A stretch of DNA of 64,000 bases, from positions 42,966,001 to 43,030,000 of the forward strand of contig NC_082714.1 of NCBI RefSeq assembly GCF_030144855.1, in the 5' to 3' direction. This document shows, in pieces, positions 5,729 through 60,228 of this stretch (positions within the stretch are counted from its first letter, which is position 1; the number at the start of each line of letters is the position of its first letter). The notes under the pieces were generated by a model, which ran no database searches, had not been told where the DNA came from, and saw only the letters and a program-made list of their open reading frames with translations. The translations under genes and the position numbers were made by a program. The DNA comes from Hypanus sabinus. Its lineage: Eukaryota.

Positions 5729-6770
5729 CTTCTTCTTGTGCTGTTTTATGGCGGTTGGCAAACCAGCTTTAAGGTGCATTACCGCCACCTACTAGACTGG
5801 AGTGTGGACCATTTGCTAAGCAGGAGGAATGAAAAGGATTGCATTCCCTAAATTCTAAATAATAAACCAGTGTCTTTCAGATACTTCATGATATAGGTAT
5901 GTATTTCTCTTGAAATCCCACTTAAAATGTCTTCTATACCCACAGCAGTTTTTTTTTTGTTCATCTTAAGCACTCCTATCATCTTCACTCTTTCTCTTTA
6001 GTACCTCTTACATTTTATCAATACATGTTCAACTGCTTCTGGTTGATTACAGTATTCACACAACCCAGTTGGATGTTACCCTATTTTGTGTAACCAATTC
6101 TTAAACTACTGATGATCGCTTCTATCTTTCTATGCCCGCCTGATACTCTTTGGTATCTGACTTGCCTTTGTATTTCGTACAGTTGTCTCCCTGTTTCACT
6201 CTCATCCTAGCGCTTCTGCCATGTCCCCTCAATGTGTCTTTTTATAATGATTTTGACCTCTGCTTTGATTAGAGGTTATCTGGACCTCTGTTATAGATGA
6301 TTTGAGTGATTGTTTAGCTATGATATCCACTTTTTAATTACCCTCCACATCACAATGAGCAGGAACCCAAAGGAAGGTTACTTCTACCCCATTTTCGGTC
6401 AGTGTATACAACTTGCATAGAATCTCCAGTAAAGTATCCTGTCTACTTTCTGATTTTCTTGATTTGATAGAGGTTGATGCAGACAAACTGTCTGAACAGA
6501 TCACAGCCTTTTTGACGTTATTTTCTTCTATCCAAGATAATGCACTCAATATTGACATTAATTCTGTTGCATACACTGATAAAATGGTTTGATGTTATTT
6601 TCCTGATACTAGTTTTGCAATGAGGAACGTAGACTGCAATACCGGTGTGGCCAGAACTAGGGCCTTTTGATCCATCCGTAAATATTACAAGTTCGTTTCT
6701 AAAATACAGGTCTATATATTCAGCTACCAGTTCAATTCCACAATCAAACCCAACAGCCTATGGAAATTTA
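5729..6770 (-). mobile_element. Nimb/I-clade LINE 3' fragment: RNase H, C-terminal zinc finger, 3'UTR, GAA tail
   Basis: ORF 6334-6576 (ICSDSLS...FLWVPAHCDVEGN); 3'UTR GGTGGCGGTAATGCACC; (GAA)n tail at 5729-5737. Confidence 0.8.
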
Positions 6771-6983
6771 CGCGACCTCGCGAGATTAACAAACCGAGAT
6801 TAACTGGCCCAGATGGTACTTGAAGGCCCGGACCGAGCATGGAGCAATTGATCGGCCTTAAACAAGCTGGCATTTGTGGGTTATTCAGTGTCAGGGGCGG
6901 GGGAAGAGACGCCATTGAGGCGGTATAAATCGGTAGCGCGGCGGTACTGCGGCCTTTTGTGTCCCAGAGTGAGGAAGGTGAGG
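6771..6983 (+). promoter_or_regulatory. Promoter copy A of the SNHG9-like snoRNA host
   Basis: CCTCGCGAGA 6776-6785, GGGGCGGGG, TATAAAT 6924-6930, pyrimidine start CCTTTT about 6953, donor AAG|GTGAG at 6978; paralogous to 40.66 and 60.03 kb. Confidence 0.75.
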
Positions 6984-7502
6984 TGATTGTGAATGTCTGA
7001 TAGTGCACAGTATAAAGCTACACATTGTAGTGGTTATTTAGCAATGCACTCTGTTATCGAAAACGCTTGTTTGCAGTATCAGGTGCTGCGCAAAAAAACA
7101 TTAAACAACAAAATAGATCATGCAGAATGATAATCATCGGCGGTTCAAAATTTGATCGTGGGGGAGATTTTTTTTAACTAAATCGTTTTTTAAGGCCACA
7201 ATTTGCACCTGTTGAGCTTTAATTAAAGAAATCTATTCTGTTTGTTATCTATCATCTATGTCGTGAAAGGTTCATTTTATGGCAATAGCGTAGTTTAAAG
7301 GTACAGAGTATTGTTATCAATAGTGCAACACAAAACAAAGTAGTGACCATGAACTTTGGAAATCATAGTGTGGGGGGGGGGGATTGTTTCTAATTGTTGA
7401 GTGTGGGCCTCTCCCCAATGAGAGAGAAGAGGGCACATCCCTGATGATGAGGGTCAATGCTGCTGTCATTGTTTATAGTCGGGTGGCTTGCCAGTTTTGA
7501 GT

Positions 7503-7637
7503 GTGGCATACTCTGAAAGTTAACAACAGCATTATCTATTGTTGTTGGTAAGATAAGTGTGCCAAAATTAACTGGTATGCTAAGCTTATTGCCCACTGTT
7601 CTTATTTGTGGCTGATAAAACCCGCATACCAATAAAT
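7503..7637 (+). ncRNA. SNORA78: H/ACA snoRNA, SNORA78(ACA64)-like, copy A
   Basis: Two hairpins (GGCATACT...AGTGTGCC; GGTATGC...GCATACC), H box AAATTA, terminal ATA plus 3 nt; pockets TGAAA/AGAT and AGCT/AAACCC resemble human SNORA78 as recalled; synteny with RPS2. Confidence 0.7.
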
Positions 7638-7826
7638 GGACATCAAGGAACGGATGTTGAAAAATCAAAATGTTAAAACCTAAGTGATGTCTTGATAGGG
7701 AAATGGCTTTAAAGTATCAGATTGACGATTTCTATTAGAACTGACAAAAAATGTTTTGCATAATTGTAGGCACAGAAGCAGTCCTTTTGATTTATTGCTG
7801 ATCAAATATTTTTCATTCCATCTGAA

Positions 7827-7948
7827 TTGCTGAACACTGTCCTGGTTGTGGGCCTAATTTTCTCTTGGACATCCAGCCCTGTTCATGCCCCACAGTACTG
7901 TTCTTTTGGGTACAGCTGCTTGGTTCCTGGCGTTGACAGCTGACAACT
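7827..7948 (+). ncRNA. Candidate second H/ACA snoRNA, copy A
   Basis: Hairpin TGAACA/TGTTCA plus CTGGTTGT/ACATCCAG, H box ACAGTA 7892-7897, hairpin CTGTT/GACAG, ACA 7943-7945; near-identical in copy B. Confidence 0.5.
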
Positions 7949-8419
7949 GGCTTTAAGTCATACAATCTTAGTCTGGACTGGAGTGTGGGTCAGGATATCT
8001 GAATCTTATATGTATGTTTGTTTGAATCAAATTCTATATTTTAAAAAACCTGTATTCTTTAAAAACTGTACTATATATTTAAAGCAATAATCTTGAGATC
8101 CTTTCTGCAAAATACTGTTAGTGTTCTATTCCATAATAACTTTAAAATCAAGCATCCTCTTGATTATATTGGAAACTATCAGTACATACTCAACTATTGA
8201 TTACAGTACCTGCACTTGTCATTGATGTTTATTAGAAACAACATACTAATTAACCCAACACAAAATACTGGAGGAACTCAGCAGGTCAGGCAGCATCCAT
8301 CGAAATGAACAGATAATCGACATTTGACTATTCATTTCCATAGATGCTGCCTGACCGGAGTTCCTCCAGTATTTTGTGTGTTGCTTTGGATTCCCAGCAA
8401 ATGCAGACTTTCTTGTGTT

Positions 8420-8770
8420 TCTTTATGCACCCAAACCTCAAACTCAATATTAATCCCCTCCCATATTTCTCAACCATCACACTTCTTTCTGGATATTATA
8501 AATATGTCTTCCTGTTCTCTCTTAATTCCTTTGTTTTATCAACACTTTTTTTATTCAACTTTTAATGATTTTCAATTCTCCTTTGCTAATTTATCTGCTT
8601 GTTTCGTTTTCTCCATGCCCCGTAGGTTTACCCAGTATGTTAATGCAAGCTGTGTTCTCTGTTCCAGAGGTGTGACTCTTCACTCCACCTGCATTACTGC
8701 CACTAGTGTTGACCTTGTTGCACTGTCCCACACCAGGTTAGATTATCTGTTCAAAGTGCAATTGTTAATT
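8420..8770 (-). mobile_element. Old Nimb/I-type LINE ORF2 fragment (also at about 44390-44730)
   Basis: Minus-strand translation ...TLVAVMQVE*RVTPLEQRTQLALTYWVNLRGH. Confidence 0.55.
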
Positions 8771-9344
8771 CCACACTTGAAAAAAGTTCACCGTTTTGCA
8801 GCTTGTGCTTTGTTCTTGCTGCCCTTATTCATAGCTTCTGTGCTCTTTCCAACTGCACCCATGAATTTGACTGGGTGATCTCTTGGAATTTCAAAGACCT
8901 GAGCCTTGCACTATTATAAACAAGGGTCCTTTGCCCTTCCACCCTCTAACTTAATTTTCTCTTCCCAGAGTCATGTTACCTTTGTTCTGATTTTCCTTGA
9001 GCTGTTGAGCACTTCTATTACACTTCTTGTTCAGTAGTTTAAATTGGTTTATTGTCACGTTTGCTGTTGGATGCTATCTGTACAGGTAAATCCATGGCAT
9101 AATTACATTAAATTAGTACAAGGGAAAACCAATAATGGTGCTGATTAGTGTTGTGATTACAAAGTGCAGTGCAGGTAAATAAGGTGCAAGGTTATAAGGT
9201 CATTTGAACTCATGATTCCAATGTACGCAAGGTCTGATTTATTGTTAAATTGTAATTTGAAGAGAAGTACTTATTTTTTTTATTCTTGTTACAGGTCTGA
9301 AGTTTAGTGGATTGACGTGTGCTCATTGTTTTCACAGGAGCATC

Positions 9345-9790
9345 ACCACACTCTGGCTAATTTGTTAGGTACATCTTCTAACGGTCAAGAGGTCCAGTTC
9401 TGACCAAACGGCAGCATGGAGAAGAAATGTGATCTAAGTGACTTTGAACGTGGAATGATTATTGGTGCCAGGCTGAGCGGTCTGAGCATCTCAAAAACTG
9501 CTGATCTCCTGGGCTTTTCACGCACAACAGTCTCTAAAGTTTATAAAGAATGGTGTGAAAAACAGAAAACCTCCTTTGAGCGGCAGTTCTGTGGGTGAAA
9601 ATGCCTTGTTCATGAGGTCTGGAGATTGGCCAGACTAGTTCAAGCAGATGGAAAGGCAACAGTAACTCAAATAGCTGTTACCACAGTGATGTGCAGAAGG
9701 GCATTTCTGAACATGCAACTCATTGAATCTTGAAGTGGATGGGTTACAGCAGCAGAAGACTGCACTGGGTTCCACACCTGAGTGGATATT
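9345..9790 (+). mobile_element. Degenerate Tc1-like transposon (also 45320-45348 plus 46029-46450)
   Basis: ORF 9416-9598 MEKKCDLSDFERGMIIGARLSGLSISKTADLLGFSRTTVS, a Tc1 HTH. Confidence 0.8.
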
Positions 9791-10614
9791 GAAACAATAT
9801 ATTTACCATTCCTGAAATGTATAATGCTCTTAAAACTAAATTAGAGACTTGTACTGAGATTAGATGAAATATGTTAGCTGTTAGAAGTAAAATAAAACAA
9901 TAGTGGAAATGTTGAATAGCTTGATGTTTTAGCCATTATTCTTTCAATTGAGCTGTATCTTTTGACCACATTGGAAAACAATCTTGAATTAATATGTTAA
10001 TTGCTGCTGATTTTCTGAGTAATGTGGGAAGGAATGATTACTTTGTCTTGATGATCCATTTTTCCCTCTGTTCTGAAAAACTCTTTTAATACATCAAGAA
10101 CTGTTCATAGTCTGGAATGGTGTTTGTAGATATGTCAGGTGTTTAAGATCTAAATTGAGTGTTGCTTGACCAGTGTTTCTGATCATTTTCTGCTTAATTT
10201 CAAATATTAGGCACTTGAAGGTTTTTTTTGCTTTGTACTAATGCAATGGAATACTTGACAATCGCAATGATTTTGCTATAGCTTGGGAATAAAATAAAAC
10301 CTTGGTTCTTGACAGTTGAAAGCCAGGTGCCCAAATCTGTTATTAGATCACGTAGAGCTGGGGTGATGGAATAAATGGACATCAACCTCTGAAGTGCCTG
10401 TTGGATCCCTTTCCAAGCATTCTAAGCTTGCCAAGCCACACTTTATATCAGCAATATCTTAAGTATCGATTCTCAAGCAAAAATGTAGGGATAGGGATGT
10501 CAGAAGTACTGCTAGAACACTATAAGAGTTTTTTTTAGAGCTAATAGTACATGAAACCTGGTTTAAACATGTAGTTGGCATCTACATGCTGTTCAGAAGT
10601 AATTCAATCACAGT

Positions 10615-12100
10615 AGACAAGAAAATCTGTAGATGCTGAAAATCCAAGCAACAGACACAAATCTGGGGCAACTCAGCAAGTCAGGTAGCATCTATGGAAG
10701 AGTACTGTTGACATTTTGGGCTGAGACCCTTTAGTAGGACTGGAGGACAAAGCTGAGGAGGAGTTAAAGGGTTGGGGGTGGTGAAGTAAAAAGCTGGGAA
10801 GTTGATTGGTGACCATGCCTGCCTGTTCATTGGCAGCAGGGCTGTCCCACAATTTTCCTTTGCTACATCGATGACTGCATTGGTGCTACTTTCAACGTCT
10901 ATGTGGAACTCATTGACTTCATCCACTTAGCCTCCAATTTCCATCCTGTTCTCAAATTTACCTGGTCCATTTCTAACACCTCTCCCCCTTTCTCAATCTG
11001 ACTATCTGGAGACAGCTTATCTATTGACATCTATTGTAAACCCATGGACTCACAGCTACCTGGACTGTACCGCTGCCCACCTTTCAGTTGTTTAAAAACA
11101 CTATCCGCTTCTCTCAATTCCTCTTCCCCCACAACTGCTCTCAGGATGAGGCTTTTCATTCCAAAATGAGATGTCCTTCAAAGAAAGGGTCTTCCTTCCT
11201 CCACTATCAACACTGCTCTCAACCATGTCTCTCCCATTTCACGCACATCTGCTCTCTCCCCATCCTCCCACCGCCCCACAAGGGATAGGGTTCTTGACCT
11301 CCCCTACCATCCCAGCATCTTCCACATTCAGCAGATAAATGTCCACAACTGCCATCTCCAATGGGATTCCACCATCTTTCCCTCTCCCACCCCTACACTT
11401 TCTGATTTCCACAACTCCCTGGTCCATTCGTACCTCTGCATTGATCTCTGCTCCCAGCAAGAACAAGAGCTACACCACCTCCCTCACTACTATTCAGTAC
11501 TCCAAATGGGTGCTGGTAAGCTGACCTGTGAGTGTTGGGGTTATGTACTGTGGCTGGTACATCAGTGAGAGGCAATGCAGATTGGGAGACTACTTTGCCA
11601 AGCACCAATGCTCCATCCACCAGAAAAAGTGGGATCTCCAAGTGCCCACCCATTTTACTTCCACTTCCCATTTCGATATGTCCATCCATTGTAGTAATAA
11701 GGACACACTCCAGTAGTAGGAGCAACTCCTTGTATTCTGTCTGGGTAGCTTCCAACCTGATGGCATGAGCATTGATTTCAGCTTCTGGTAATGCCCTGCC
11801 CTTACCACTGCCCATCCCCTTTTTCCTTTATCTTCTTGCCTGCCCAATTGCTTCCCTCTGGTGCTCCTCCCCTTTTCTTTCTTTAATGGCCTCCTGTCCT
11901 TTGATTCCCCCTTCTCCAACCCTGTATCTCTTTCATCAATCAACTTCCCAGCTGTTTACTTCACCCCTCCCCCTCCCAGTTTCCCCTATCACCTTGTTTC
12001 TCACTTTTTAACTTTTCATTTTTTCTCCAATTCTGAAGGGTCTTGGTCTGAAATGTGAATTGTACTCTCTCCCACAAATGTTGCCTGGCCTGCTGAGTCT
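10615..12100 (+). mobile_element. Penelope-like retroelement fragments with GIY-YIG remnants (paralog about 47290-48850)
   Basis: FHPALKFTWSIS, IPFSQFL and YISERQCRLGDYFAKH motifs; flanking ...GGAACTCAGCA... repeats. Confidence 0.7.
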
Positions 12101-13979
12101 CATATTTACATCTTCTGCATATGAAGATTTTCTAAGTAACTTTCATCAAACCCTTTCAGTCAGCAGTGCTGCTACTTGTGGCATTCACTGTCCTGGTCTT
12201 CACTCCTTCACTAAACTTCTGTTCTCTCTACCCTTCCTCATATGAACTGGAAACTTTAGAAGTTCTGAAATTGCAGAAGATCAGCGTTATCAAGCTAAAA
12301 CTTTCATCATCTTCAGACAATCTGTTGCATTTCCAGCATCTGTAGTATTTTGCTTTTGGATTTTCCCCTTAACCATTTAAATTGTTGATACCAGATGATA
12401 GCTCGAACTGCCAAATCTTTATATTCAATTAATCGATGAATCCTTCCCAACTCTCCGTCATCCATTGGTGATATTTTTGCCTTTTCCAAAGCTGATACAG
12501 AGCTCCAAGAATACTGACTTACATTTTCATGGTATTCCAAAACATTAAGTATGTTCCTGTTGCCTTGTTCTTGGCCTTCTGTGGGGTTGCCTGATATATT
12601 TGGAAGAAATTAATCTGGTGAGCTTGTCAGTACTATAAAGGATTCCTGAAGTATGTTTCAACTTCTGACAGGGATATCTAAAGATCATACTTCTTGTTGT
12701 GCATTTAATACTTAAGTAAAACTTGAGTAATTTTGTAAATATATTTGATTAACCATTTTGTTGTCTTGCATAATTCATTCCAGGTTACATTTAAAATGTC
12801 ATGTCATTACACCACCACATAACAGCGCACCTCACTAAAGTAAAAACTAAATGTAGATGAGTTATCCCTGGCTCATGTTTTTCTTTCAATTAGTTTTATA
12901 TTTTGGAATTACAAAATATAACATACCTGTGCTCAAAGACAGTGCATTCTGTAGAGTGAATAGTAACTTCACTAAAGTTGATCTCTTTGCATTAAAACAA
13001 ACTTCAATCACATTACTAATTTTGATCTTTGGTCTGCTTCCATCTCAGTGTCTAACTTGTCTGCCTATCCATCTAAATTGTCCTGTGATTAGGCTATGAT
13101 TAAGCGGGGGGTCGGGGGGAGAATTAGTGGGCGGTGTGGCTCGAAGGGCCTGTTCCACATTGTATGTCAATAAATAATCAAATGGAGCTTCAGCAGGTTT
13201 GCAGATTAATAGAATACATTGAATTCTACTTTGCACAATAAAGATGAACATACATAAACCAAGGAACTTGTATGGATCGTAAGGATGCTGATTCAGGTCA
13301 CCTAGTCATTGATCTATTACAAAATACAGTCCATAAAATAATAATTCCTTGGTTTATTAATTTGCAAATTTAATAACTGCCATTCAACTAAAGTGAATAT
13401 AATCACATGAAAATTCAGAGCACAAAAACCGTGGAGCAATGTAGATAATAGGCATTTTCTGGAGCAAACAAAGGCAGGGTCTGAGGGGTAGCCAATAGTT
13501 AGACTACTCAGGAAAGGGAGAACAGACTTGAGGACTGGAAATAGTTTATTTAGCAGGTCCTTAAAGCCATGCCACCCGATTAACCCTAGCCCATTTACAG
13601 GACTATTCACAATGGCCAATTAACCTACCCAGTACGTCTTTGGACTGTGGGAGGAAACTGGAGCGCCTGGGATAAACCCATGCATTCCACACGGTAGACA
13701 TACAAACTCCTTACAGAGGATGCCAGGGTTGAACGTTGAGCTGTAATAGTGCTGCCCAAAAAGTAGTAAAGAAACATAATACAAGAATGAATAGACCCCT
13801 ATGCCACTGCACTTTACAGTATGTTAAACTTCTTGTCACAAAGTATCCACTATATATATATAGTATGTTCATAATTATTCTGCAGACAGGTTGTTGTGAC
13901 TGACTACAACTGAGCCACAAAGAAGCTGTAACTGGGAAATGAAAGTCTTTATATCATGCAGCAAACCTTCCATTTCCAA

Positions 13980-16768: not shown

Positions 16769-20085
<3,317 letters not shown>

Positions 20086-39254: not shown

Positions 39255-39276
39255 GACTCTTCCACAGAACCTAACT

Positions 39277-46028: not shown

Positions 46029-49000
46029 TACGTCTTTTAATGCTCAAGAGGTCCAGTTCTGACCAAATGGCAGCACGGAGAAGAAATGTGATCTAAGTGA
46101 CTTTGAACGTGGAATGATTATTGGTGCCATGCTGAGCGGTCTGAGCATCTCAAAAACTGCTGATCTCCTGGGCTTTTCACGCACACCAGTCTCTAAAGTT
46201 TATAAAGAATGGTGTGAAAAACAGAAAACCTCCTTTGAGCGGCAGTTCTGTGGGTGAAAATGCCTTGTTCATGAGGTCTGGAGATTGGCCAGACTAGTTC
46301 AAGCGGATGGAAAGGAAACAGTAACTCAAATAGCTGTTACCACAGTGATGTGCAGAAGGGCATTTCTGAACATGCAACTCATTGAATCTTGAAGTGGATG
46401 GGTTACGGCAGCAGAAGACTGCACTGGGTTCCACACCTGAGTGGATATTGAAACAATATATTTACCATTCCTGAAATGTATAATGCTCTTAAAACTAAAT
46501 TAGAGACGTACTGAGGTTAGATGAAATACGTTAGCTGTTAGAAGTGAAATAAAACAATAGTGGAAATGTTGAATAGCTTCATGTTTTAGTCATTGTACTT
46601 TCAATTGAGCTCTGTCTTTTGACCACATTGGAAAACAACCTTGAATTAATACTTCCATTGTTGCTTCTTTTGCTGGTTTTCTGACTAATGTGGGAAGAAA
46701 TGATTACACTTTGTCCTGATGATCCCTTTGTCCCTCTGTTCTGGAAAAACTTTTTTAATATATAAAGAACTGTTTATAGTCTGAGGAAAGGTGTTTGTAG
46801 ATATGTCAGATGTTTCAGATTTAAATTGAGTGTTGCTTGACCAGTGTTTCTGATCATTTTCTGCTTAATTTCAAATACTGGGCACTTGAAGGTTTTTCTG
46901 CTTTACACTAATGCAATGGAATGCTTGACAACCACAATGATTTTGCTATAGCTTGGGAATGAAATAAAACTTTGGTTCTTGATAGTTGAAAGCCAGGTGC
47001 CTAAATCTATTAGATCATGTAGAGCTGGGGTGATGGAATAAGTGGACTTCAACCTCTGAAGTGCCTGTTGGATCCCTTTCCAAGCATTGCGAGCTTGCCA
47101 AGCCATGTTTTATCGGCAATATCTTAAGTATCGACTCTCAAGCAAAATTGTAGGGATACAGATGTTTAGAAGTAGTGCTATAACACTTTAGAACACCAGA
47201 GTCTTTTAGAGCTAATCATTATGGTACATGAAACCAGCTTTAAAAATGTAGTTGGCATCTACACGCTATTCAGAAGTAATTCAATCACAATGGACACGAG
47301 AGAATCCTTGGATGCTGAAAATACAAGCAACACACACAAAGCTGAGGAACTCAGCAGGTCAGACAGCACGGAAGAGTACTGTTGAAATTTCAGGCTGAGA
47401 CCCTTTAGTAGGATTGGAGGAGTTGTTAAAGGGTGGGGGTGGGGGTAGGGTTGCAGAGAAAAACAAAATGATAGTTGAAAGCTAAGGGGGGGGGGGGGTG
47501 AAGTTAAAAAGCTGGGAAGGTGATTGGTGACCATGCCTGCCTGTTTGTTGGCAACATGGCTGTCCCACATTGATGACTGCATTGGTGCTCTATATGGAGC
47601 TCGTTGACTTCATCCACTTCGCTTCCAATTTCCACCCTGCCCTCAAATTTACCTGGTCCATTTCTAACACCTCCTTCCCCTTTCTCAATCTGTTGACAGC
47701 TTATCTACTGATGTCTATTGTAAACCCATGGATTCACAGCTACCTGGACTATACCTCCTCCCACCTTTCACTTGTTTAGAAACACTATCCCCTTCTCTCA
47801 ATTTCTCTGTCCCCACAACTGCTCTCAGGATGAGGCTTTTCATTCTAGAATGAAGATGTCTTTCAAAGAAAGGGTCTTCCCTTCCTCCACTACCACGCTG
47901 CCCTCAACCATGCCTCTTAAATTTCACACACGTCTGCTCTCCCCCCATCTTCCCACCACCCTACAAGAGATAGGGTTCCTCTTGTCCTCCCCTTCCACCC
48001 CACCATCCAAGCACATAATTGCTTACAACTGCTATCTCCAATGGGATCCCACCATCAAGCACATCTTTCCCTCTCCCCCACACCTCCACTTTATAATTTC
48101 CACAACTCTGGTCCATTCATCCCTCCACATTGATCTCTGCTCCTGGCAAGAACAAGAGCTACACAACCTCACTACCATTCAGGGCCCCAAACAGTCCTTC
48201 CTGCTGAGCTGACCTGTGAGTGCTGGGGTTATATACTGTGCCTGGTGCTAGTGGTGTGGCTTGAACATCAGTGGAAGCCAATGTAGATTGAGAGACTGCT
48301 TCACCAAGCACCAATGCTCCATCCGCCAGAAAAAGTGGGATCTCCAAATGGTCACCCATTTTACTTCCACTTCCCATTTGATATGTCTATCCATGGCCTC
48401 CTCCACTGTCGTGATAAGGACACACTCTGGTTGTAGGAACAACACCTTGTATTCTGTCTGGGTAGCTTCCAACCTGATGCAATTAGCTTCAATTTCCAGT
48501 TTCTGGTAATGCCCCGCCCTCCCCCTTACCGCTCCCCATCCCCTTTTTCCTTCCTTTATCTCCTTGCCTGCCCAATTGCTTCCCTCTGGTGTTCCTATTT
48601 TCTTTCTTCCATGGCCTTCTGTCCTATCAGATTTCACCTTCTCCAACCCTGTATCTCTCTCAACAATCAACTTCCCAGCTGGTTACTTCGCCCCCCCCCC
48701 CTCCCAGTTTTGCCTATCACCTTGTTTCTCACCACCTTTTAACTCTACTCATCTTTTTCTCCAGTTCAAAAGGGTCTTGGCCTGAAATGTCAACTGCATT
48801 CTCTTCCATAGATGTTGCACGGCCTGCTGAGTTACTCCAGTATCTGGTGTGTTCCTGTGAAGTAACTCCTTGGTAGCTGAAAAAGTAAATTGACTTGATT
48901 ATTGAATATTTTAATAGCTAATTCCATTTGCAAAGACCAAAGTAGAAATTTAATCTTATTGCATCTACTCGCATCTTCTGATTGGTGTTTATTTGGGTTG

Positions 49001-49979
49001 AAATATGATTGAAAAAATGTTCAGTACACCAGTGAAATATTTCATTGCAGAAAAGAATTATGAATTTAGTATAATAACATGCCTGTACCAACAGTGAAGG
49101 CTCCTAATTGAAAAGGATGGCAGAAGCAGGACGAGATCAGAGCAGCTCTAGGACCATGTAGACTGTTGCTAGACCACAAAGGTTACTTTTGTTGAATAAT
49201 GAAACTAATCAAATTCAAACAAGCAGGGAAAAATTGCCTGGTCACAAGACTAACCTATTTGCTTTACTTTTAGGTTTAGCTTGCTTTAATAAAAATGAAT
49301 TAGTTTGCAAATTATAGCCAGATTTGGAAAGATTGATTCTGACAGAATAAAAATGCATCAGATTAAAGTTCTTCTACATGTCCTATGCTGTATCTAATGT
49401 GTCATTTAGTCTCTTGGGAAAAGTTTAAACACAACCAATTACATTCAAAATAAACTTGGGTAATAGCATATACTGAAAAGTTTCAAATCATGCAGTCTGA
49501 ATAACAGAATTCAAAGTAATTAACTCATTGAAGCTGTTTTCAAGTGGTAGTTATCCTTTCTGATGACCATTAGCATAGCTGGATTTGGTGTTGTCTTTGG
49601 AAAATTACTAAGTTTGATTTGCTTCGTCTTCTAAAAAGATAGAGTGGAATTTTAAGCTCTTGCTTCATGACAATATCTAGGTGGATAGGAAAAACGGACA
49701 AATGTGCATTCAATTTGCGAAGCATTTAGGTATTCACTTTAGTACAAACAAAAACTGAGAAAGACAGAAGATCATCTCTAAATATCAGTTGCAAATTTAA
49801 TTTTTTTAATTGGTCCAGTCTATCAAAAATAGATTTGGTTTTTTCTTTCACCAACATTTCAGCATTGTAAAGTCCAGTTTATAATGATAAATAAGATTGA
49901 AAGATCTGCTTTCCACAAACTGGAATATCATCTGCCACTCTACAAGCTTCCCCATCCAGCACTTAATTCTCTAACTTCT

Positions 49980-51215
49980 GACATCTCCAACAAAATCCCA
50001 CCATCAAGCACATCTTTCCCCTCCTCCTTCTCCCTACTTTTTGCTTTCCAAAGGGATTGTTCCCTACATGACTCCCTTGTCCATTCAACCCTCAGTACTG
50101 CTTTCCTACCTGGGCCTTGTCCTTACAAGTGGAACAAGTGCTAGACCTCCCTTACCACCATTCAGGACCCCAAACAGTCCTTCCAAGACAGGTAACACTT
50201 AACCTGAAGTCTGTTGGGGGTCACCTGTATCGGGTTCTCCTAGTGTGATCTGTATATCGGTGAGACTCAATGTAGATTGGGAAACCACTTCACTGAGCAC
50301 CACCAGAAAAAGTGAGATCTCCAACGTTCACCCATTTTAATTCCATTTCCCATTCCAACATGTCCATCCACAGCCTCCTCTGTTACAGTGATGAGGCCAC
50401 ACTCAGGTTGGAGGAGCAGTACCTTATATGCTGTCTGGGTAGCCTCCAACCTGATGGCATGAACATCGATTTCTCAAACTTCTGGTTATACCTAGCCCCC
50501 CCCCCCCCCCACCTTTCACCATTACCATTTCACTCGCTTATCTCATCTCACCTGCCCATCACCTCCCTCTTGTGGATCCTCCCACAGAACCATAGAACAT
50601 TACAGCACAGAAACAGGCCTTTTGGCCCTTCTTGGCTGTGCTGAACCATTTTCTGCCTAGTCCCACTGACCTGGTTTGTGAGTTTTGTTTCTTTTTTTTG
50701 TGTGTGTGTGTGTGGGAGGGGATGTTGATGTAAGGCCTTTCTGTATTTCATGGCCGTCTGGATAAGACAAATATCAGAGTTGTCTTGTACGTGCATACTT
50801 AGGCAATAAAATAAACCTTTAAATCTTGACCCTCTCACCATGAAGATTCAATGAGAACTGGAAGGGCAACATATTAATCTTATTGATTAGAGTTTACACA
50901 CCTCCCCCTTTTCTTTCTTCCTTTCTGTCCTCTTATCAGATTCCCTCTTCTCCAGCCCTTTTATGTCTTTCTCCAATCAACTTCCCAGTTCTTTTACTTC
51001 ACCCTTCCTGGTTTTACCTACCGCCTTGTGCTTCTTCCTCCCCACCCCCCCCCCCACACCTTCATACTGATTTGTCTTTATTTCTGCAGTCCTGATGAAG
51101 GGTCTCGGCCCAAAACGGCAACTGTACTCTTTTCTATAGATGCCTGGCCTGCTGAGTTCCTCCAGCATTTTGTGTGTGTTGCTTAGATTTCCAGCATTTG
51201 CAGATTTTGTCTTGT
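49980..51215 (+). mobile_element. Penelope-like fragment with small nested LINE 3' ends
   Basis: YIGETQCRLGNHF and DEATLRLEEQYLICCLGSLQPDGMNIDFSNF. Confidence 0.7.
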
Positions 51216-51637
51216 TCATTAATGTGTTTGCATCTTAAATACTGGTTAAGTGGTCATTATAGATCACAAGCTCTGAGATTCTGCTAATAATCTTCCCTGA
51301 GGACTGTGATGATGGGCAAGTTCCTCGCCTGAGACAATATTCCCAGTTTTTAACAGTACTTTTCAAAGGTCACAGGCACATAGGTGGCTAACACTTGCAC
51401 AGAACAGTATCTGTGAATGTGAAGCAGAGAGCAAGTTTGTAAATCTGGCAGGAGCAAAAGATGTTGGGAATGGTGCAGGTGGAGCACCACGGGAGGGTTG
51501 TGGGACAAGTGATACAGAAGTCACTTGTTTATTCTATATATTAGAATATACCAAATTGTCCTTGGAAGAGTTTGAATAATTTATAATTTCTCATGCTATT
51601 AATTGACTTCAATTAACAAAATTTTAATGGACAACTA

Positions 51638-53397
51638 CCGTAAATTCCAGACTATAAGCTGCCACTTTTTTCCCACGCTTTGAACACTGCGGCCTATACT
51701 ACGGTGCAGCTAATGCATGTTTTTTTTCATGCCGCCAAAAACATTTTGCCTCGTAACAGTAGACCAATAAAATTGATGAGTAGCTCAGAGGTCCAATGAA
51801 ATTGTACGATAAAACAAGCGCACTTTCACAATTAAATTATTGTAAATCAGTCATTTGTACTCACCCTCATCAACATGGAAAACACTCGAAGAAAAGCATA
51901 TGATGCAGCTTTTAAGTTAAAGGCGATCAATCTGGCGGTTGAAGAAGGAAATCGAGCTGCTGCACATAATCTTGGCATAAATGAATCGATGGTGAGACGG
52001 TGGAGACGCCAGCGTGAAGAACTGAGTCAATGCAAAAAGACAATAAAAGCTTTCAGAGGTAATCATAGCAGATGGCCCGAACTTGAAAACTTTCTTGAAG
52101 ACTGGGTTAACACATAGAGAGCAGGCAGCCGCGGTGTTTCCACCGTGCAGATCAGACTGAAGGCTAAAGCAATCGCCACCAAAATGAAAATCGAAGATTT
52201 TAGAGGTGGGCCATCGTGGTGTTTCAGATTTATGAGACGAAAAGGCCTGTCCGTCAGGGTACGCACGACTCTGTGTCAGCAGCTCCCTCCCGACCACGAG
52301 GAAAAACTTGCTAACTTCCGCACATTCACTCAAACAAAGATAGCGGAGAATTCCATCGGGCCAGATGATATCATAAATATGGATGAAGTACCTTTGACGT
52401 TTGACCTGTCTCTCACTCAGACTGTTAATAAAAAAGGTGACTCGTCCATCACACTGAAAACAAGTGGCCATGAGAGAACGCATTTTACTTGTGTTCTGAG
52501 CTGCACAGCATCCGGACTAAAGCTTCCACCGATGGTGATTTTTAAGCGGCTGACAATGCCAAAGGAAAAATTCCCAAAAGAAATCATGGTGAAAGTCAAT
52601 AAGAAAGGTTGGATGATGGAGAGTCTAATGAAGGATTGGCTGAGAGAGTGCTACGCCAAGCGACCAGGGGGATTTTTTCACAGAAAAAAACGGGGCTGTG
52701 AGTGGGAGGCTTGGATGACGAGCGGCGAGAAATCCTTTACCAAAACAGGACGCATGCGAAGAGCATCTTTAACTCAAGTCTGCCAGTGGATCCTAAATGC
52801 GTGGAGCCGTGTCACAACATCCACCATCACCAGCGGGTTTCGAAAGGTTGGACTGCTGCGTGATGAAGAGGACCGCGTGGCTCAAGAGCGACAATGAGGA
52901 GACTGAAGTGAATGACGAGATCCTGAGGTTGTTCAATTCGGACACTGAAGAAGAGGACTTTGATGGTTTTTGTGCGCAGGAGGAAGATGAAGAAGGCGAT
53001 CAATAACTTTTCCTGGTAGGCTGCAGTATATATATATTTTTTTACCAGTCATTAGGAGATATTGGAATGTTGTTCGTGCACTGTTCAGTAAAAAAGTATA
53101 CGCAATGTAATTTGTGTGTTACCGATACGTATGTATATTTAAAAGTAGCTGTGTTACAGGCACTGTTCGAAAAAAAGCATTTGCAATATGTATTTGTTTA
53201 TGTTACCATACGGATTTAATTAAAAGTTAAAAAATCCTCACGTGTAATATCTTTCTGTGTAAATATCTCATATTACAAGGTGGGACACCTGCGGCTTAAA
53301 ATCCGGTGCGGCCTGTACAAGTACAAAATTGATTTTCTTTCTAAAATTAGAGCGTGCGGCTTTTAATCAGGTGCGCTCTGTAGTCCGGAATCTACGG
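51638..53397 (+). mobile_element. pogo-like (POGK-type) DNA transposon with deleted DDE domain
   Basis: TIRs CCGTAAATTCCAGACTA / TAGTCCGGAATCTACGG; TA duplication; Brinker-type DBD (51875-52117), CENP-B HTH and NMDEVP DDE start (52145-52897). Confidence 0.92.
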
Positions 53398-55122
53398 TAA
53401 ATCTTTAAAAATGTATTTAAGTAGTATAATAATTTGGAATTGTAGCTTTGCCTCCCAAATGATCCCTTAATAAAATTCACAATATATCAAAAAAAACTAT
53501 CACCCCTTCTTTAAATTGAATTGGGATTCAAAACTGCATCTTGGTCATCAAATTGATAGAAGCAGATGTGAACATTAAATTCATATTTAAATCTGGGACA
53601 AAAATAGAACACATAGGGTAACTTCACGTATCCAATCAGAAGGCTATGCATGTCTTTGACAGAATATAGCCTTTGGCACAATTGACTCACAATTTACATT
53701 TGAATATAAATGTGGCATTATACAATTTAGTAATCATCTTATCCGTTTGAAGGTTCCCTAGTAGATTTTCCATTGCACAAGAGGAACTTTTAAACATTCG
53801 AGCAATCTGAAATCTCAAAGCTTATAGGCCTGCTGATAGAGAAATTCAGTTTCAGAAAAAAATACCTTTACTTAAAATTCATTAAACTTAACAAAAATTA
53901 TATTCAAAAGAGCAATGGTGATCAATTACCAGATCCCATTTGTTTTGATTCTGATAATCAATCTGCTCAATCTTTCATGTGTTGAAAAGACGAACAATAC
54001 TTGAATAGATCTCTTCTGCTATTTGTAATGAATCTACTTTTACTATCTTCTTCATATGTAGTTTTTCTTACTAACTTTTATCAAACCCTTTCAGCCAGCA
54101 GAGCTGCTACTTGTGGCATTCATTCGCTTTACTCCTTCACAGAACTTTTGTTCTCTCTACCCTTCCTCATATGAACCGGAAATGCTAGATGTTTTGAAAT
54201 TGCAGAAGATGAGAAGTTATCAAGCTAAACCATAGATTATCTTAAGACAATCTGTTGCATTTCCAACATCTGTAATATTTTGCTTTTGGGTTTTCCCCTT
54301 AACAATGTTGGCATTAGTTTGAATTGTTGATCCCAGATGATAGCCTGAACTGACAATCTTTTATATTCAATGACTTCTTTTTCCCAACTCACTGTCATCC
54401 ATTGGTGGTATTTTTGCCTTCTCCAAAGCTGATACAGAACTCCTTGAATACTGACTTTCATTTTCACAGTATTCCAAAGCATTAAGTATGTTCCTGTTGC
54501 CTTGTTCTTGGCCTTCTGTGGGGTTGCCTGATATATTTGGAAGAAATTAATCTGGTGAGCTTGTCAGTACTATAAAGGATTCCCAAAGTATGTTCCAACA
54601 TCTGATAGGGATACCTAGAGATCATAGTTCTTGTTGTGTATTTAATACTTGAGTATAATTTGAGTACAGTAATTTTGTAAATATATTTAAGCATTGTTGT
54701 CTTGCATAATTCATTACAGAGAATGGCACATGTCATTACACCATATCAAAACAGTGCATCTCACTAATGTAAAAACTAAATGTACATGAGTTACCCATGG
54801 CTGTTTTTCTTTCAAATAGTTTTATATTTTGGAGTTACAAAACATAACATACCTGTGCTCAAAGACAATGCATTCCCTAGAAGTGAATAGTAACCTCACT
54901 AAACTTGATCTCTTCTACTATTTTATTCAGGTACAATTTGCATTAAAACAAACTTCAATCACATTACTAATTTTGATCTTCGGTCTGCTTCCATCTCAGT
55001 GTCTAACTTGTCTGTCTATCCATCTAAATTGTCCTGTGATTAGGCTATGATTAAGTGGGGGAGAGGGGAGGAATTAGTGGGCGGTGTGGCTCGAAGGGCC
55101 TGTTCCACATTGTATGTCAACT

Positions 55123-57200: not shown

Positions 57201-59990
57201 GGTTTTACAACCATTTTTTTTAATAAATTGCTTGAATTCCTGGCTATTGGCCAGTAAGCTCCTTGCATTCCATTGTAAAAGAATCACCATAATTAGTATG
57301 AACCAACCCATGACACTTCCTGGTTTGACTGATTAGTGAGGTTCTCCCTCACTTCTTCCTATGTCACTCCTACTAACCCTAAATGGTTCATTGCTGCTTT
57401 GACAACCAGCTGAATTTTTTCACTTTTTGACTTTACCTCAGCTGTACTATTAATCACTCCTGCAATGAATATTACTAGAGCCTTTTTGTGTACATAAATT
57501 CTGTCATTTGTTCTTCGTTGCATCTCTCGCATCCCTCTAGCTCCCTGTTCATTGGAAATATTATTCTGTTCTCTTGACATTCTTACAGCTTCTGCATAAG
57601 TGATTTTTTTTCACTCTTATTTCTTGAATTTTATTCTCCCATCTCATAACCTCACACCCACTATTTGCCACATTATGCGCTCCTCCACAATTACAGCATT
57701 TTGGTTGTACTCCTGTTCCACACTTTCCATACTCATGATCACCCCTACATCTAGCACATCTCCTCCACCTATTACAGTTTTTAGCTATGTGTCCAAACCT
57801 TTGACAATGGCACCTCAATGGCTTTGGCACATACACTGTAACTCATGAAACCCAGTAACACTTTCCTTGGCACTCTTTCTTCTTCAATCAATACCGTCTC
57901 ACTTTCCCTTTTCACTCCATCCTTTGTTGTTTTCAGTCTTTGAACATTCATTATTTTTCCTCTTTAGCTCCTCCATATTTATACTCACGGTACCCCCGTG
58001 ATCACTCCTTTACATCCACCACCATTTCGTGCTCCCACCCTCCCTGTGTATTCCACCTTACATTTCCCTATCTCTCTTAATTTGAGTGCCTTATCAAGCG
58101 GTTCCCCATTCGCACATTTTACGAAGGGGTAATGAAGGGTCTCGGCACGACACACAGTGCTTCCTCCTATAGTTCCACCAGCAATTTGTGTGTGTTGTGC
58201 GCACATTTTACCAATAGGTTGCCATCATTAAGGACATTTGCAAATATTATTTTTTACCCCATCTTATTTGCCAGTGTTGTTGTAGGCACAAACGGGATAA
58301 TTTTCTTCATGTTACCTTGAGCCTTCTCATTAAACGTTTTTCTAGTAACACTGTGGTGACCCATTTCCTGGCATATCCGAACCGGCTCACAATTAGATAG
58401 CCTACAGGGGTTTGCGAGCACAGAGCTTTGGAGCCTCTGCGCCACGGGGGGGGGGGGGGGCAGGTTGAGGGAGGCTTAAAAGTGAGGCTGAGGATTTCGA
58501 ATAGAGTTTTTTCCTTCGACTGCAGTTACCGACTCCGTGTCGTAATTTTAGCGCTGCGTGTAGCACACCGCTACAATTGGTGACCCCGACGGTCCAAACG
58601 ATTTTTGGACCAGAAATGACCGATGCCGCCTCTGTTCATGCAGTTTCGTTGAAACTGCCGGGTTTCTGGACACAGCGACCGAACCTATGGTTTCCAGCAG
58701 GTTCGTTTGGCACGGACTCCGCAAACAGGTCAGTGAATGGGCCAAAACGTGCATGCACTGCCAGACGGCCAAGGTGCAGCGGCACACCAAAGCCCCACCG
58801 CAGCAATTCCATCCGGCCCACCAGCGTTTCGACCACATTCATGTGGATATTGTGGGCCCCCTGCCCGTGTCGAGAGGAGCGCGGCACCTCCTGACTATCG
58901 TGGACTGGTTCACAAGATGGCCAGAGGCGGTCCCGCTCACCGACACCACCTCCGAATCTTGCACCCTAGCCCTGATCACCATCTGAATATCTCGCTTTGG
59001 TGTACCGGCCCACATTACCTCCGACAGAGGCGCCCAGTTCACCTCCAGCCTGTGGTCAGCTATGGCCAGCCTTTTGGGGACAGCTGCACCACACAACTGC
59101 CTACCACCCACAGTCGAACGGGCTAGTGGAGCGTTTCCACCGTCACCTGAAGTCGGCCCTCATGGCCCGCCTGCGAGGAGCCAACTGGGCGGACGAGCTT
59201 CCCTGGGTCCTACTCGGCATCCGCACAGCGCCCAAGGACGACCTGCACGCCTTGTCAGCCGAGTTGGTAGATGGCGCACCCCTGGTCGTCCCCAGGGAGT
59301 TCCTACCAGCCCCACAGGGGCAAGAGGAAGATCCAGCAGCAGTCCTGGGCAGACTACGCGAGAAGCTCGGTAACCTGGCCCCCATACCCACTTCACAGCA
59401 CGGGTGGAACCCAACCTGCGTACCCAAAGACCTGCAGAACTGTAAGTTTGTGTTTGTACGAAGGGGCGGGCATCGGCCACCGCTGCAGCGGCCATACGAG
59501 GGGCCGTTTATGGTGCTCAGGAACAACGGGTCCATGTTCGTGCTGGACGTTGGGGGGAAAGAGGAGGTTTTCACGGTGGACCGCCTCAAACCGGCCCATG
59601 TGGACCTGGCGCAACCGGCCGAGTTTCCGGCACCTCGGCGCAGAGGCCGACCTCCCAAACAGGGTCCGGCCCAGACTGTGGATATTGGGGGGTGTATCGC
59701 CGGTTCTGGGGGGGGGGGTTATGTGGCGACCCATTTCCTGGCACATCTGAACTGGCTCACAATTAGATGGCCTACGGGGGTTTGCAAGCACAGAGCTTTG
59801 GAGCCTCTGTGCCACGGGGGGCAGGTTGAGGGAGGCTTAAAAGTGAGGCTCAGGATTTCGAATAAAGTTTTTTCCTTCGACTGCAGTTACCGACTCCGTG
59901 TCGTAATTTTAGCGCTGCATGTAGCACACCGCTACAACACCTTCTCCGTGAACTTGATCATCTTCTTTACTTCTCCACTACCATTTCACA
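57195..59990 (-). mobile_element. Nimb/I-clade LINE 5' part (ORF1 plus ORF2 start), interrupted by Gypsy
   Basis: YVPKPLRC..CQRFGH..KNC...CARC...CCNCGGAH zinc knuckles; ORF2 start MVILLQWNARSLLAN; ORF1 resumes at 59941-59990. Confidence 0.85.
58352..59936 (+). mobile_element. Gypsy LTR retrotransposon, internally deleted (gag start fused to integrase)
   Basis: LTRs 58352-58575 and 59722-59936 (TG...CA); TSD ACAC; PBS TGGTGACCCCGACG (tRNA-Trp); G-rich PPT; integrase HVDIVGPL, YHPQSNGLVERFH, PYEGPF. Confidence 0.95.
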
Positions 59991-60228
59991 GGCGATCTCC
60001 GGCGCGCACGTCTATTAAAGCTTCTGAGATCTCGCGAGATTAACCAACCGGGATTACCTGGCCCAGATGGGAGGTGAGGGCCCGGACCGAGCATGGAGTA
60101 ATTCATCGGCTTTGAACAAATTCATATTTATATGTTATTCGGTGTCGGGGCGGGGGAAGAGGTGCGGCGGCTAGGGTATAAACCGGTAGTACTGCAGACT
60201 TTGGTGTCGCAGTGTAAGGAAGGTGAGG
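59990..60228 (+). promoter_or_regulatory. Promoter copy C, retaining the RPS2-side TATA-like box
   Basis: TCTATTAAAGCTTCT shared with 32504-32518; TCTCGCGAGA 60030-60039; GC box; TATAAA 60177-60182; donor at 60223. Confidence 0.78.

What the first reader, a model, noticed from the sequence alone, without database searches (positions are those of the whole stretch)
5729..60039. Nimb/I-clade LINEs recurrently inserted beside the TCTCGCGAGA motif of the RPS2/SNHG9 bidirectional promoter: candidate promoter-targeting retrotransposon system
Seen: all three promoter copies have a minus-strand, Nimb/I-type LINE within about 40 bp of the palindrome. In B the intact promoter (read in C as TCTATTAAAGCTTCT-GAGATCTCGCGAGA) is split: TCTATTAAAGCTTCT lies at 32504-32518, merged with the LINE's GAA tail, and GAGGTCTCGCGAGA lies 8.1 kb away at 40659-40672. 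In A (junction 5729) and C (junction about 59990) the insertion point is about 25 bp further out, at the RPS2 start. The B element differs clearly from A (RNase H, 3'UTR) and from C (ORF1, APE start), so there were at least two independent insertions; A and C could be halves of one ancestral event. Known: TCTCGCGAGA is the BANP-bound CpG-island promoter motif, and site-specific APE LINEs are mostly described for R1/Tx1 in multicopy RNA genes or repeats. Inference: these LINEs are tethered to, or prefer, such housekeeping promoters, prime on CTTC via the GAA tail, and may borrow the promoter because they lie in the RPS2 direction of transcription.
Basis: partly seen in the sequence, partly recalled or inferred. 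Interest (0 to 1): 0.85.

Follow-up and report, generated by a model that had tools for sequence, protein, structure and literature searches.

The report
LINE insertion hotspot in duplicated RPS2 promoter
In a stingray, three old copies of the promoter shared by ribosomal protein gene RPS2 and a snoRNA host gene were each hit, separately, by jumping genes of one type within about 50-90 bases of the same control motif. This most likely shows that such elements favour very active, open promoters and survive only in spare gene copies, not that they have a dedicated homing system.

Summary
The window holds three diverged copies (A, B, C) of an RPS2/snoRNA-host bidirectional promoter with the CGCG element. 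The only three I/Nimb-like LINE pieces in the 64 kb all sit on the RPS2 side of that element, all on the minus strand. Their junctions lie about 32, 5 and 52-90 bp from it.

A and B are different families with different junctions, so they are separate insertions. C is a third family relative to B. At least two events are certain and three are likely.

Corrections:
- B's 8.1-kb insert is an internally deleted Nimb LINE with a CR1-like LINE nested in its ORF1.
- A's motif is one base off in the assembly but perfect in reads.

Raw reads show that about 100-300 other copies of A's family have unrelated 3' flanks. That rules out R1/Tx1-style site specificity. Tethering to the motif was not tested.

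Three other elements also landed nearby: an unrelated GC-rich LINE, the CR1-like LINE and the LTR element. The likeliest reading is a general preference for an open, highly transcribed promoter, as published for the Drosophila I element, plus relaxed selection on redundant RPS2 copies.

The parts
1000..5606 (-). GC-rich LINE of another clade (ORF1 with ZCCHC3-like RNA-binding domain, endonuclease, RT). It lies in intron 1 of RPS2 copy A, in sense orientation, with its 5' end about 120 bp from exon 1.
   Evidence: Pfam hits. Only 22-25% aa identity to the Nimb relative. Read depth falls to the unique level after ~5606.
5607..5729 (-). Left flank of A: start of RPS2 intron 1 and exon 1, ending about 32 bp before the motif position.
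   Evidence: 39/46 identity to B_left 32447-32492. Unique read depth.
5730..6757 (-). Nimb-A: a 5'-truncated I/Nimb-like LINE. It comprises an AAGAAGAA tail, ~130-nt 3'UTR, the ORF2 C-terminus and RNase H (equivalent to aa ~945-1248 of P0005).
   Evidence: Read depth is 25-157 between 5730 and ~6734, against 1-3 in the flanks. Family contigs continue past 6721 with the same sequence as 6722-6743.
6758..6775 (.). 18 nt of unclear origin between Nimb-A and the motif. It could be filler or a badly diverged promoter remnant; 11/19 bases match C in fixed register.
   Evidence: p about 0.004.
6776..6785 (.). CGCG element of copy A. It reads CCTCGCGAGA in the assembly and TCTCGCGAGA in reads.
   Evidence: table 3, place 6776.
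6786..13170 (+). snoRNA host gene copy A (TATAAA, TOP-like start, GT donor). It contains the ACA64-family H/ACA snoRNA at 7508-7637.
   Evidence: CpG observed/expected is 0.84.
16844..32518 (-). RPS2 (uS5) copy B. Exons lie at about 16844-16909, 20479-20580, 21408-21440, 30629-30772, 30903-30977 and 31100-31135; exon 1 and the TATA-like half of the core promoter are at 32447-32518. Conserved residues are damaged and the exon-1 donor is lost, so it is decaying.
   Evidence: (G>D, RR>QY, P>L, P>H).
32519..35861 (-). Nimb-B, 3' part: GAAGAAG tail, 3'UTR, RNase H, RT C-terminal part, endonuclease, ORF2 start and the ORF1 zinc-knuckle part. The RT core (about aa 250-665) is deleted. A ~210-bp small repeat is inserted at 34894-35102.
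35862..39995 (-). CR1-like LINE nested in Nimb-B ORF1. It has a GDSL-esterase ORF1, endonuclease, RT and a tail of the TGTAATTGTTATATGGTTATA type.
   Evidence: Read depth is 390-4000 here, falling to 12-19 right of ~40057.
39996..40640 (-). Nimb-B, 5' part: ORF1 N-terminus (start about 40371) and ~250-nt 5'UTR with a G14 run. The 5' end lies between ~40620 and 40658.
   Evidence: The ORF1 N-terminal domain aligns to the C LINE. Low-copy repeat depth of 12-19 up to ~40617, then unique.
40644..40658 (.). Possible diverged second copy (CCTAGTAACGTCTCC) of the target-site duplication TCTATTAAAGCTTCT.
   Evidence: 12/19 matches to C in fixed register, p about 0.0009. Not significant as a free local alignment.
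40663..40672 (.). CGCG element of copy B.
40673..55120 (+). snoRNA host gene copy B (ACA64 at 41678-41807). It is interrupted by a B-specific 5.2-kb insert at 48833-54038.
   Evidence: CpG observed/expected is 1.04.
57222..58351 (-). Nimb-C: the first 24 aa of ORF2 (57222-57287) and ORF1 (zinc knuckles 57545-57842, N-terminal domain 58202-58328). It continues across the LTR element into 59941-~59975.
58352..59936 (+). Internally deleted LTR retroelement nested in the 5' end of Nimb-C. LTRs are at 58352-58576 and 59722-59936 (91% alike), with an integrase remnant, flanked by ACAC.
59941..60029 (-). Copy C. 59941-59978 is the 5' end of Nimb-C and/or the first bases of intron 1. 59979-60025 is RPS2 exon 1 plus the TATA-like box, which runs unbroken into the motif.
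   Evidence: Alignment to B_left 32469-32518.
60030..60039 (.). CGCG element of copy C.
60040..61832 (+). snoRNA host gene copy C (partial; no ACA64 hit).
   Evidence: CpG observed/expected is 0.92.

Best explanation
The locus is a tandem array of old duplicates of the head-to-head RPS2 / snoRNA-host gene pair, which is driven by a CGCG-element (TCTCGCGAGA) CpG-island promoter.

MECHANISM
- In each duplicate the snoRNA-host side has stayed an unmethylated, presumably active promoter.
- The RPS2 side became redundant.
- I/Nimb-like LINEs with endonuclease, RT, RNase H and (GAA)n tails integrate by ordinary target-primed reverse transcription. A plus-strand nick exposed ...CTTCT-3' in B and ...AACT-3' in A, which paired with the GAA tail.
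- These elements are not sequence-specific. Like the Drosophila I element, they land more often than average in the nucleosome-free core of very active promoters.
- Such hits are normally removed by selection. Here they persisted because they destroyed only a spare RPS2 copy and left the motif and the snoRNA-host start intact. That selection also explains why every junction is on one side of the motif.
- Other elements (a GC-rich LINE, a CR1-like LINE, an LTR element) used the same permissive spot.

SHOWN: the anatomy, the independence of A and B, the lack of sequence specificity, and the retained CpG-island character.

INFERRED: the open-chromatin preference, the selection filter, and the order of events.
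For: - Three duplicates and their junctions.
- Nimb pieces occur only at the three promoters, all on the minus strand.
- A and B are different families (35-60% aa) with different junctions (-32 and -5).
- B and C ORF1s are 41-46% aa identical, and C is unbroken across B's site.
- The A family is dispersed, at roughly 100-300 copies, with (GAA)n tails and unrelated flanks.
- CpG observed/expected is 0.84-1.04 on the snoRNA-host side of all three copies, and ACA64 is intact in A and B.
- RPS2-B is decaying.
- Other element classes lie within 90-650 bp.
- Chance under uniform insertion is about 3e-7.
- Published work (PMC10018349): new I-element insertions in Drosophila are enriched 1.7-fold in promoters and about six-fold in the most highly expressed ones, while fixed insertions are 7-fold depleted there.
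Against: - No genome-wide count of Nimb junctions relative to promoters could be made, so the preference rests on one locus.
- All three Nimb events fall within about 50-90 bp and share one orientation. That is tighter than the broad 100-200 bp upstream preference reported for the I element.
- No chromatin or expression data exist here for this species.
- The origin of the last 18-32 nt before the motif in A is unresolved.
- The right junction of B is resolved only to about 40 nt.
Confidence: 0.5

Rival explanations
1. One reading: Nimb LINEs are tethered to the CGCG element or its binding protein (BANP or similar), or otherwise specialised for such housekeeping promoters. They insert a few tens of bp from the motif, with the 5' end facing it, so that they can use the promoter.
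For: - There are three junctions at about -5, -32 and -52 to -90, all on one side and in one orientation, in three paralogous copies.
- In C, ORF1 starts within about 100 nt of the RPS2 TATA-like box.
- An unchecked note from the scan reports another LINE inside a CpG-island promoter of this genome.
Against: - About 100-300 other copies of the A family have unrelated flanks.
- A is a dead 1-kb 3' fragment that cannot benefit from a promoter.
- Elements of other classes landed in the same place.
- Selection on the snoRNA-host side explains the one-sidedness without any tether.
- No motif-distance statistic exists beyond this locus.
Confidence: 0.12
2. A damage-prone promoter. Transcription-linked or palindrome-linked nicks and breaks at this very active divergent promoter supply 3'-OH ends, which LINE RNAs of any family use for priming. 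The hotspot would then belong to the DNA, not to the LINE.
For: - Several element classes cluster here.
- The nick sites differ in sequence (AACT|CT and CTTCT|GA).
- A shows a probable target deletion of 13-28 bp.
Against: - Both 3' junctions have intact tails with microhomology, as in normal endonuclease-dependent priming.
- B may have a ~15-bp target-site duplication.
- The LTR element has a normal 4-bp duplication.
Confidence: 0.15
3. Chance plus tolerance. The genome is rich in transposable elements, dead duplicate promoters accumulate insertions like any neutral DNA, and the pattern was picked out after the fact from many windows.
For: - The window is full of LINE, LTR and DNA-transposon pieces.
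- The scan covers about 250,000 windows.
- Only two events are strictly proven to be independent.
Against: - Uniform-insertion probability is about 7e-4 for a second hit and about 3e-7 for a second and third hit in the same 47-bp homologous interval and orientation.
- No other Nimb piece exists in the 64 kb.
Confidence: 0.18
4. One ancestral insertion before the duplications, later reshaped. In its partial form: A (the 3' half) and C (the 5' half) are remnants of one element.
For: - A and C carry non-overlapping halves of a Nimb-type element.
- A's left flank ends at -32 and C's right flank starts at -52 to -90. That geometry would fit a 20-58-bp target duplication.
Against: - The A and B LINE DNA cannot be aligned, while their flanks are 83-94% identical.
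- C is unbroken across the A and B sites, and B_left is unbroken across the A and C sites.
- The A copy is 95-99% like about 30 other copies, whereas the A-C flanks differ by 15-18%, so A's insertion is younger than the A/C split.
- The LTR element nested in C is itself about 9% LTR-to-LTR diverged.
Confidence: 0.05

Closest known systems
Drosophila I element (I clade LINE): insertion preference for active promoters (Cao et al., Nucleic Acids Res 2023, PMC10018349)
   Same: - Same broad clade architecture: endonuclease, RT, RNase H, zinc-knuckle ORF1, trinucleotide-repeat tail.
- New insertions are enriched in promoters, more so in highly expressed ones.
- Such insertions are purged from fixed copies, so they survive only where they are harmless.
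   Different: - The fly preference is modest and broad (about 100-200 bp upstream).
- Here, three hits fall within 50-90 bp in one orientation, in a vertebrate, and are seen only as fixed copies at one duplicated locus.
Sequence-specific endonuclease-bearing LINEs (R1 and Tx1 groups, e.g. R1 in 28S rDNA; Keno, Mutsu and Koshi in U2, 5S and TTC repeats)
   Same: - Repeated insertion at nearly the same place of a repeated target.
- The tail pairs with the target.
   Different: - In those families, essentially all copies share the same flanking sequence.
- Here, other copies of the A family have unrelated flanks, and the two intact junctions differ in position and sequence.
Tethered retrotransposons: Dictyostelium TRE5-A (a LINE about 48 bp upstream of tRNA genes), and yeast Ty1/Ty3 and S. 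pombe Tf1 at Pol III or Pol II promoters (PMC6101501, PMC5911963)
   Same: Insertion at a short, fairly fixed distance from a protein-bound promoter element, which avoids damage to essential genes.
   Different: - Those cases rest on genome-wide profiles and known protein contacts.
- Here there is one locus and no protein evidence.
- A LINE tethered to a Pol II promoter element has not been described, to my knowledge.
CGCG element / BANP motif bidirectional promoters (PMC6192621; PMC2920758)
   Same: - TCTCGCGAGA sits between divergent starts of a ribosomal-protein gene and a non-coding host gene, in a CpG island.
- The motif and CpG richness are kept in all three copies.
   Different: Nothing unusual about the promoter itself, except that the RPS2 half has been cut off or replaced in every copy in the window.

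Membership tests
I/Nimb-type LINE (RNase H-bearing, endonuclease-type non-LTR retrotransposon) | ORF2 with an N-terminal apurinic-like endonuclease, then RT, then RNase H | tested here: met
   - Nimb-B has endonuclease (PF14529, 3e-20) and RNase H.
- It is collinear with P0005, which has Exo_endo_phos, RVT_1 and RNase_H.
- A holds the RNase H part and C the first 24 aa of ORF2.
- B's RT core is deleted.
I/Nimb-type LINE (RNase H-bearing, endonuclease-type non-LTR retrotransposon) | ORF1 with CCHC zinc knuckles | tested here: met
   Read directly from the translations of 57564-57842 (C) and 35613-35828 (B). There is no Pfam hit for these short pieces.
I/Nimb-type LINE (RNase H-bearing, endonuclease-type non-LTR retrotransposon) | RT-domain phylogeny places it in the Nimb clade rather than I, Ingi, LOA or others | not tested
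   - No named reference sequences were available.
- The best relatives are unnamed fish or metagenome proteins at 42-56% identity.
Sequence-specific LINE (R1/Tx1-like) | Most genomic copies share the same flanking target sequence | tested here: not met
   - 56 raw reads, plus contigs of three runs, overhang the 3' junction of the A family.
- They agree only in the TTC repeats and then diverge (agreement 0.46-0.49).
- The B and C families were not tested.
Factor-tethered promoter-targeting retrotransposon (TRE5-A / Ty3 / Tf1-like) | Genome-wide peak of insertions at a set distance and orientation from a bound promoter element | not testable with these tools
   - No searchable copy of this genome was available.
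- Protein databases hold no same-family copies with flanks.
- Both read-laying runs were used on this locus.
CGCG-element bidirectional CpG-island promoter | TCTCGCGAGA between divergent starts in CpG-rich DNA of a housekeeping or ribosomal-protein gene | tested here: met
   - Motif.
- uS5 exons lie on the minus strand, and a TOP-like start plus a snoRNA host lie on the plus strand.
- CpG observed/expected is 0.84-1.04.
- Actual transcription was not tested.

The most novel reading that the evidence does not exclude
In cartilaginous fishes, I/Nimb-clade LINEs have a strong, directional preference for the nucleosome-free core of CGCG-element (BANP-type) housekeeping promoters. They insert a few tens of bp from the motif, in the sense direction of one of the divergent genes. 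Full-length copies, as in C, are then transcribed from a germline-active host promoter. This would be the first Pol II promoter-targeting LINE.
Probability: 0.12. Interest if true: 0.75.

Novelty: new member of a known kind. Interest (0 to 1): 0.42.

Why it matters
Fixed transposon copies rarely show where elements prefer to land, because selection removes hits in promoters. A tandem array of redundant promoter copies acts as a natural trap that keeps such hits.

Here the trap caught two to three independent I/Nimb-type LINEs plus three other elements within a few hundred bases. That suggests the active-promoter preference measured for the fly I element also holds for related vertebrate LINEs.

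If a genome-wide test instead showed a sharp, motif-linked peak, this would be a new targeting mode for LINEs, and a way for them to obtain germline expression.

Tried and rejected
1. I first thought both A and B kept 60-100 bp of exon-1 DNA on the motif side, which would mean giant duplications. Free local alignments against shuffles were not significant. In A, the apparent CTACCAGTTCA match to C is LINE sequence, because family contigs carry it too. Only the last ~19 nt show weak fixed-register similarity.

2. I tested a 19-bp 'TSD geometry' linking A and C as one event. It was dropped because C's junction is only known to lie within 59941-59978, and A's copy looks younger than the A/C split.

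3. Counting in-frame stops to date the C LINE was abandoned. ORF1 there changes frame, so stop counts are unreliable.

4. Protein searches for same-family copies with flanks, intended as a small genome-wide test, failed. The best hits are 42-56% identical, mostly on 1-6-kb contigs of other organisms.

5. The RNA evidence search found no run on record as RNA holding either the promoter/LINE junction of C or the B stretch. This says nothing about expression.

6. Rfam found only the two ACA64 snoRNAs.

7. Searches of earlier scan notes for other Nimb-promoter cases returned only titles.

Full report
LAYOUT

The window comes from a stingray, according to a note from the scan. Exact TCTCGCGAGA occurs twice, at 40663 and 60030, where 0.01 matches are expected by chance. 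A one-mismatch copy, CCTCGCGAGA, is at 6776. In public reads that base is T: three of three Hi-C reads show it, one with no other difference, as do all contigs.

Self-comparison shows three duplicated units that begin exactly at the motif. They are A 6774-13170, B 40668-48832 plus 54039-55120, and C 60028-61832. The plus-strand side has a TATAAA box, a TOP-like start and a GT donor. It hosts an ACA64-family H/ACA snoRNA in A and B.

The minus-strand side is RPS2 (uS5). The exons of one copy run from 16844 to 31135, with exon 1 at about 32447-32493. This copy carries changes at conserved residues (G>D, RR>QY, P>L, P>H) and has lost its exon-1 donor, so it is decaying.

In the first 500 bp right of the motif, A, B and C are about equally distant. 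Substitutions are 16.8-19.9% overall and 13.8-16.1% outside CpG columns. A and B are closer further on, at 5.5-10%. All three keep CpG observed/expected of 0.84-1.04 on that side. They therefore still look like unmethylated promoters.

THE THREE NIMB-LIKE PIECES

A full-length relative, P0005, has endonuclease, RT and RNase H by Pfam. Its tblastn hits of the Nimb type fall at only three places in the window, all on the minus strand:
- 5860-6727 (ORF2 aa 952-1248)
- 32714-35252 (aa 3-249 and 666-1213)
- 57222-57287 (aa 3-24)

Its other hits are distant RTs of CR1/L2-like elements, at 22-32% identity.

COPY A

The left flank, 5686-5729, matches exon 1 and the intron start of copy B at 39/46. It stops at ...CCAAAC, followed by TTCTTCTT and the LINE 3'UTR.

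Hi-C raw reads laid at 80% likeness or better give depth of 2-3 in the flank. Depth is 33-157 over 5701-5794, then 25-100 up to about 6734, and 1-2.6 beyond that. The piece is therefore a member of a dispersed family of roughly 100-300 copies.

Reads that overhang position 5729 (56 reads, plus contigs of three runs) show more TTC repeats and then unrelated letters, with agreement of 0.46-0.49. The family has (GAA)n tails and no common target sequence.

Contigs that stop fitting at 6721 continue with TTGTACTATCAGTTTGATTCCACA. That is the window's 6722-6743 with a 3-nt indel, so the LINE reaches at least 6743. The reading frame AVGFDCGIELVAEY...IFTDGSKG suggests it reaches about 6757.

The last 18-32 nt before the motif match copy C at only 11/19 and 17/32 in fixed register. 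By contrast, identity is 63/71 just right of the motif. A target deletion of about 13-28 bp, with some filler, is the simplest reading.

COPY B

The left flank runs unbroken from exon 1 through TCTATTAAAGCTTCT (32504-32518). It aligns to C 59979-60025. The LINE tail GAAGAAG merges with the target's AGAAG.

The 8.1-kb insert is composite. Nimb-B occupies 32519-35861 and carries RNase H, the RT C-terminal part, the endonuclease and the ORF1 zinc knuckles. About 416 aa of RT core are missing, and a ~210-bp small repeat sits at 34894-35102.

At about 35862 a CR1-like LINE begins with its typical tail. It carries RT, endonuclease and a GDSL-esterase ORF1 up to about 39995. To its right, 40371-40194 encodes an ORF1 N-terminal domain that aligns to the one in copy C. 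The CR1-like element is therefore nested in Nimb-B ORF1.

Read depth supports this. It is 390-4000 over the CR1-like part, 12-19 over 40057-40617 (a low-copy LINE 5' end), and under 1 from 40618 on. The Nimb-B 5' end thus lies between about 40620 and 40658.

The 15 nt before GAGG, CCTAGTAACGTCTCC, may be a diverged second copy of TCTATTAAAGCTTCT. The match is 12/19 in fixed register with p about 0.0009, but it is not significant as a free alignment.

COPY C

From 59979 to the motif the promoter is unbroken. Directly to its left, however, is a plus-strand LTR element at 58352-59936. Its LTRs are 91% alike, it has an integrase remnant, and it is flanked by ACAC.

With it removed, the ORF1 N-terminal domain of a minus-strand Nimb-like LINE lies about 60-100 nt from the exon-1 remnant. 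The LINE/host junction is somewhere in 59941-59978, which is 52-90 bp from the motif. The LINE ends at ORF2 aa 24, at 57222.

INDEPENDENCE OF THE INSERTIONS

The A and B LINEs are collinear at 35-60% aa, but alignable as DNA only in 38-56-bp patches. Their flanks are 83-94% identical. Their 3' junctions are 27 bp apart. These are two separate events.

The B and C ORF1s are 41-46% aa identical. C is unbroken across B's site, and B_left is unbroken across C's site. These are also separate events.

A and C do not overlap, and geometry alone cannot exclude one event with a long duplication. However, about 100 of 705 reads are 95-99% like the A copy. That is too many for segmental paralogs at about 0.5x coverage, so A is within a few percent of many family members. 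The A-C flanks, in contrast, differ by 15-18%. A's insertion is therefore probably younger than the A/C split. Three events are likely and two are certain.

IS THE CLUSTERING MORE THAN CHANCE?

Under uniform insertion in 64 kb, a second hit in the same 47-bp homologous interval and orientation has p about 7e-4. A second and a third together have p about 3e-7. Even allowing for the number of windows scanned, three events would not be chance. Two events would be borderline.

WHAT KIND OF PREFERENCE IS IT?

Sequence specificity is excluded for the A family. The two nick sites, AACT|CT and CTTCT|GA, share little beyond 1-5 nt of pairing with the tail.

The site also attracted other elements:
- a GC-rich LINE of another clade, whose 5' end lies about 120 bp beyond exon 1 of A
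- the CR1-like LINE inside Nimb-B
- the LTR element inside Nimb-C

All junctions lie on the RPS2 side, and the motif and the snoRNA-host start are intact in every copy. That fits selection protecting the snoRNA-host side.

Published de novo mapping in Drosophila shows that the I element inserts 1.7-fold more often in promoters, and about six-fold more often in the most highly expressed ones. Fixed copies are 7-fold depleted there (PMC10018349). The CGCG element marks DNase-accessible bidirectional promoters of ribosomal-protein genes (PMC6192621).

The best-supported reading is therefore an ordinary non-specific LINE with a preference for very active, open promoters, caught in redundant gene copies. 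Tethering to the motif is not excluded, but it has no support beyond this locus.

LIMITS

- No genome-wide test was possible.
- The clade label 'Nimb' was not verified by phylogeny.
- No RNA data could be laid on the junctions.
- An unchecked scan note (s1-216752) reports another LINE inside a CpG-island promoter of this genome. It is a lead only.

Noticed in passing
window 1-947: Near-perfect tandem array: 30.5 copies of a 31-bp unit at 99% identity (it also reads as a 62-bp period). It sits at the 3' side of the GC-rich LINE and is open in all six frames.
   Followed up: partly
window 6786-13170 vs 40673-55120: A-B divergence is mosaic: about 17% in the first 500 bp after the motif, 5.5-6% over 7457-9373 (around the ACA64 snoRNA), and 10% beyond. 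This suggests gene conversion or a later partial duplication around the snoRNA.
   Followed up: partly
window 6776: The assembly has C (CCTCGCGAGA), but all reads and contigs laid there have T, which restores the perfect palindrome. This is either an allele or a close paralog.
   Followed up: partly
window 5560-5755 and 6585-6960: Contigs from three differently labelled runs bridge both junctions of Nimb-A at about 95-96% identity, one with an extra CTT in the tail. The same insertion therefore exists in a paralog or in related samples.
   Followed up: no
window 34894-35102; also 51093-51224, 19650-19717, 44221-44390, 8258-8427, 10617-10699, 15245-15352: A short (~100-200 bp) repeat found in both orientations is scattered through the window. 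One copy is inserted in the Nimb-B endonuclease region. It is possibly a MITE or SINE.
   Followed up: no
window 48833-54038: A B-specific 5.2-kb insert relative to A. It includes a plus-strand ORF (51836-52894) that starts with a pogo/Tigger-like DNA-binding region, judged by eye only.
   Followed up: no
window 62622-64000: A second copy of the LTR element (LTR 62628-62844, gag with DUF7041) sits just after a CR1-like fragment (62116-62544). It cuts off snoRNA-host copy C.
   Followed up: partly
window 21441-30628: The RPS2 copy has an intron of about 9 kb between exons that are close together in mammals. L2/CR1-like RT pieces (24067-26200) lie inside it.
   Followed up: no
window 41179-41365: A small repeat inside snoRNA-host intron B has read depth of about 100 against under 1 around it. 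Loose ends at 41303 and 41343 show that it is a ~40-bp core shared by many loci.
   Followed up: no
window 56377-56961 (-): A 195-aa open frame with no Pfam match lies between the end of duplicon B and the Nimb-C piece. Its origin is unknown.
   Followed up: no
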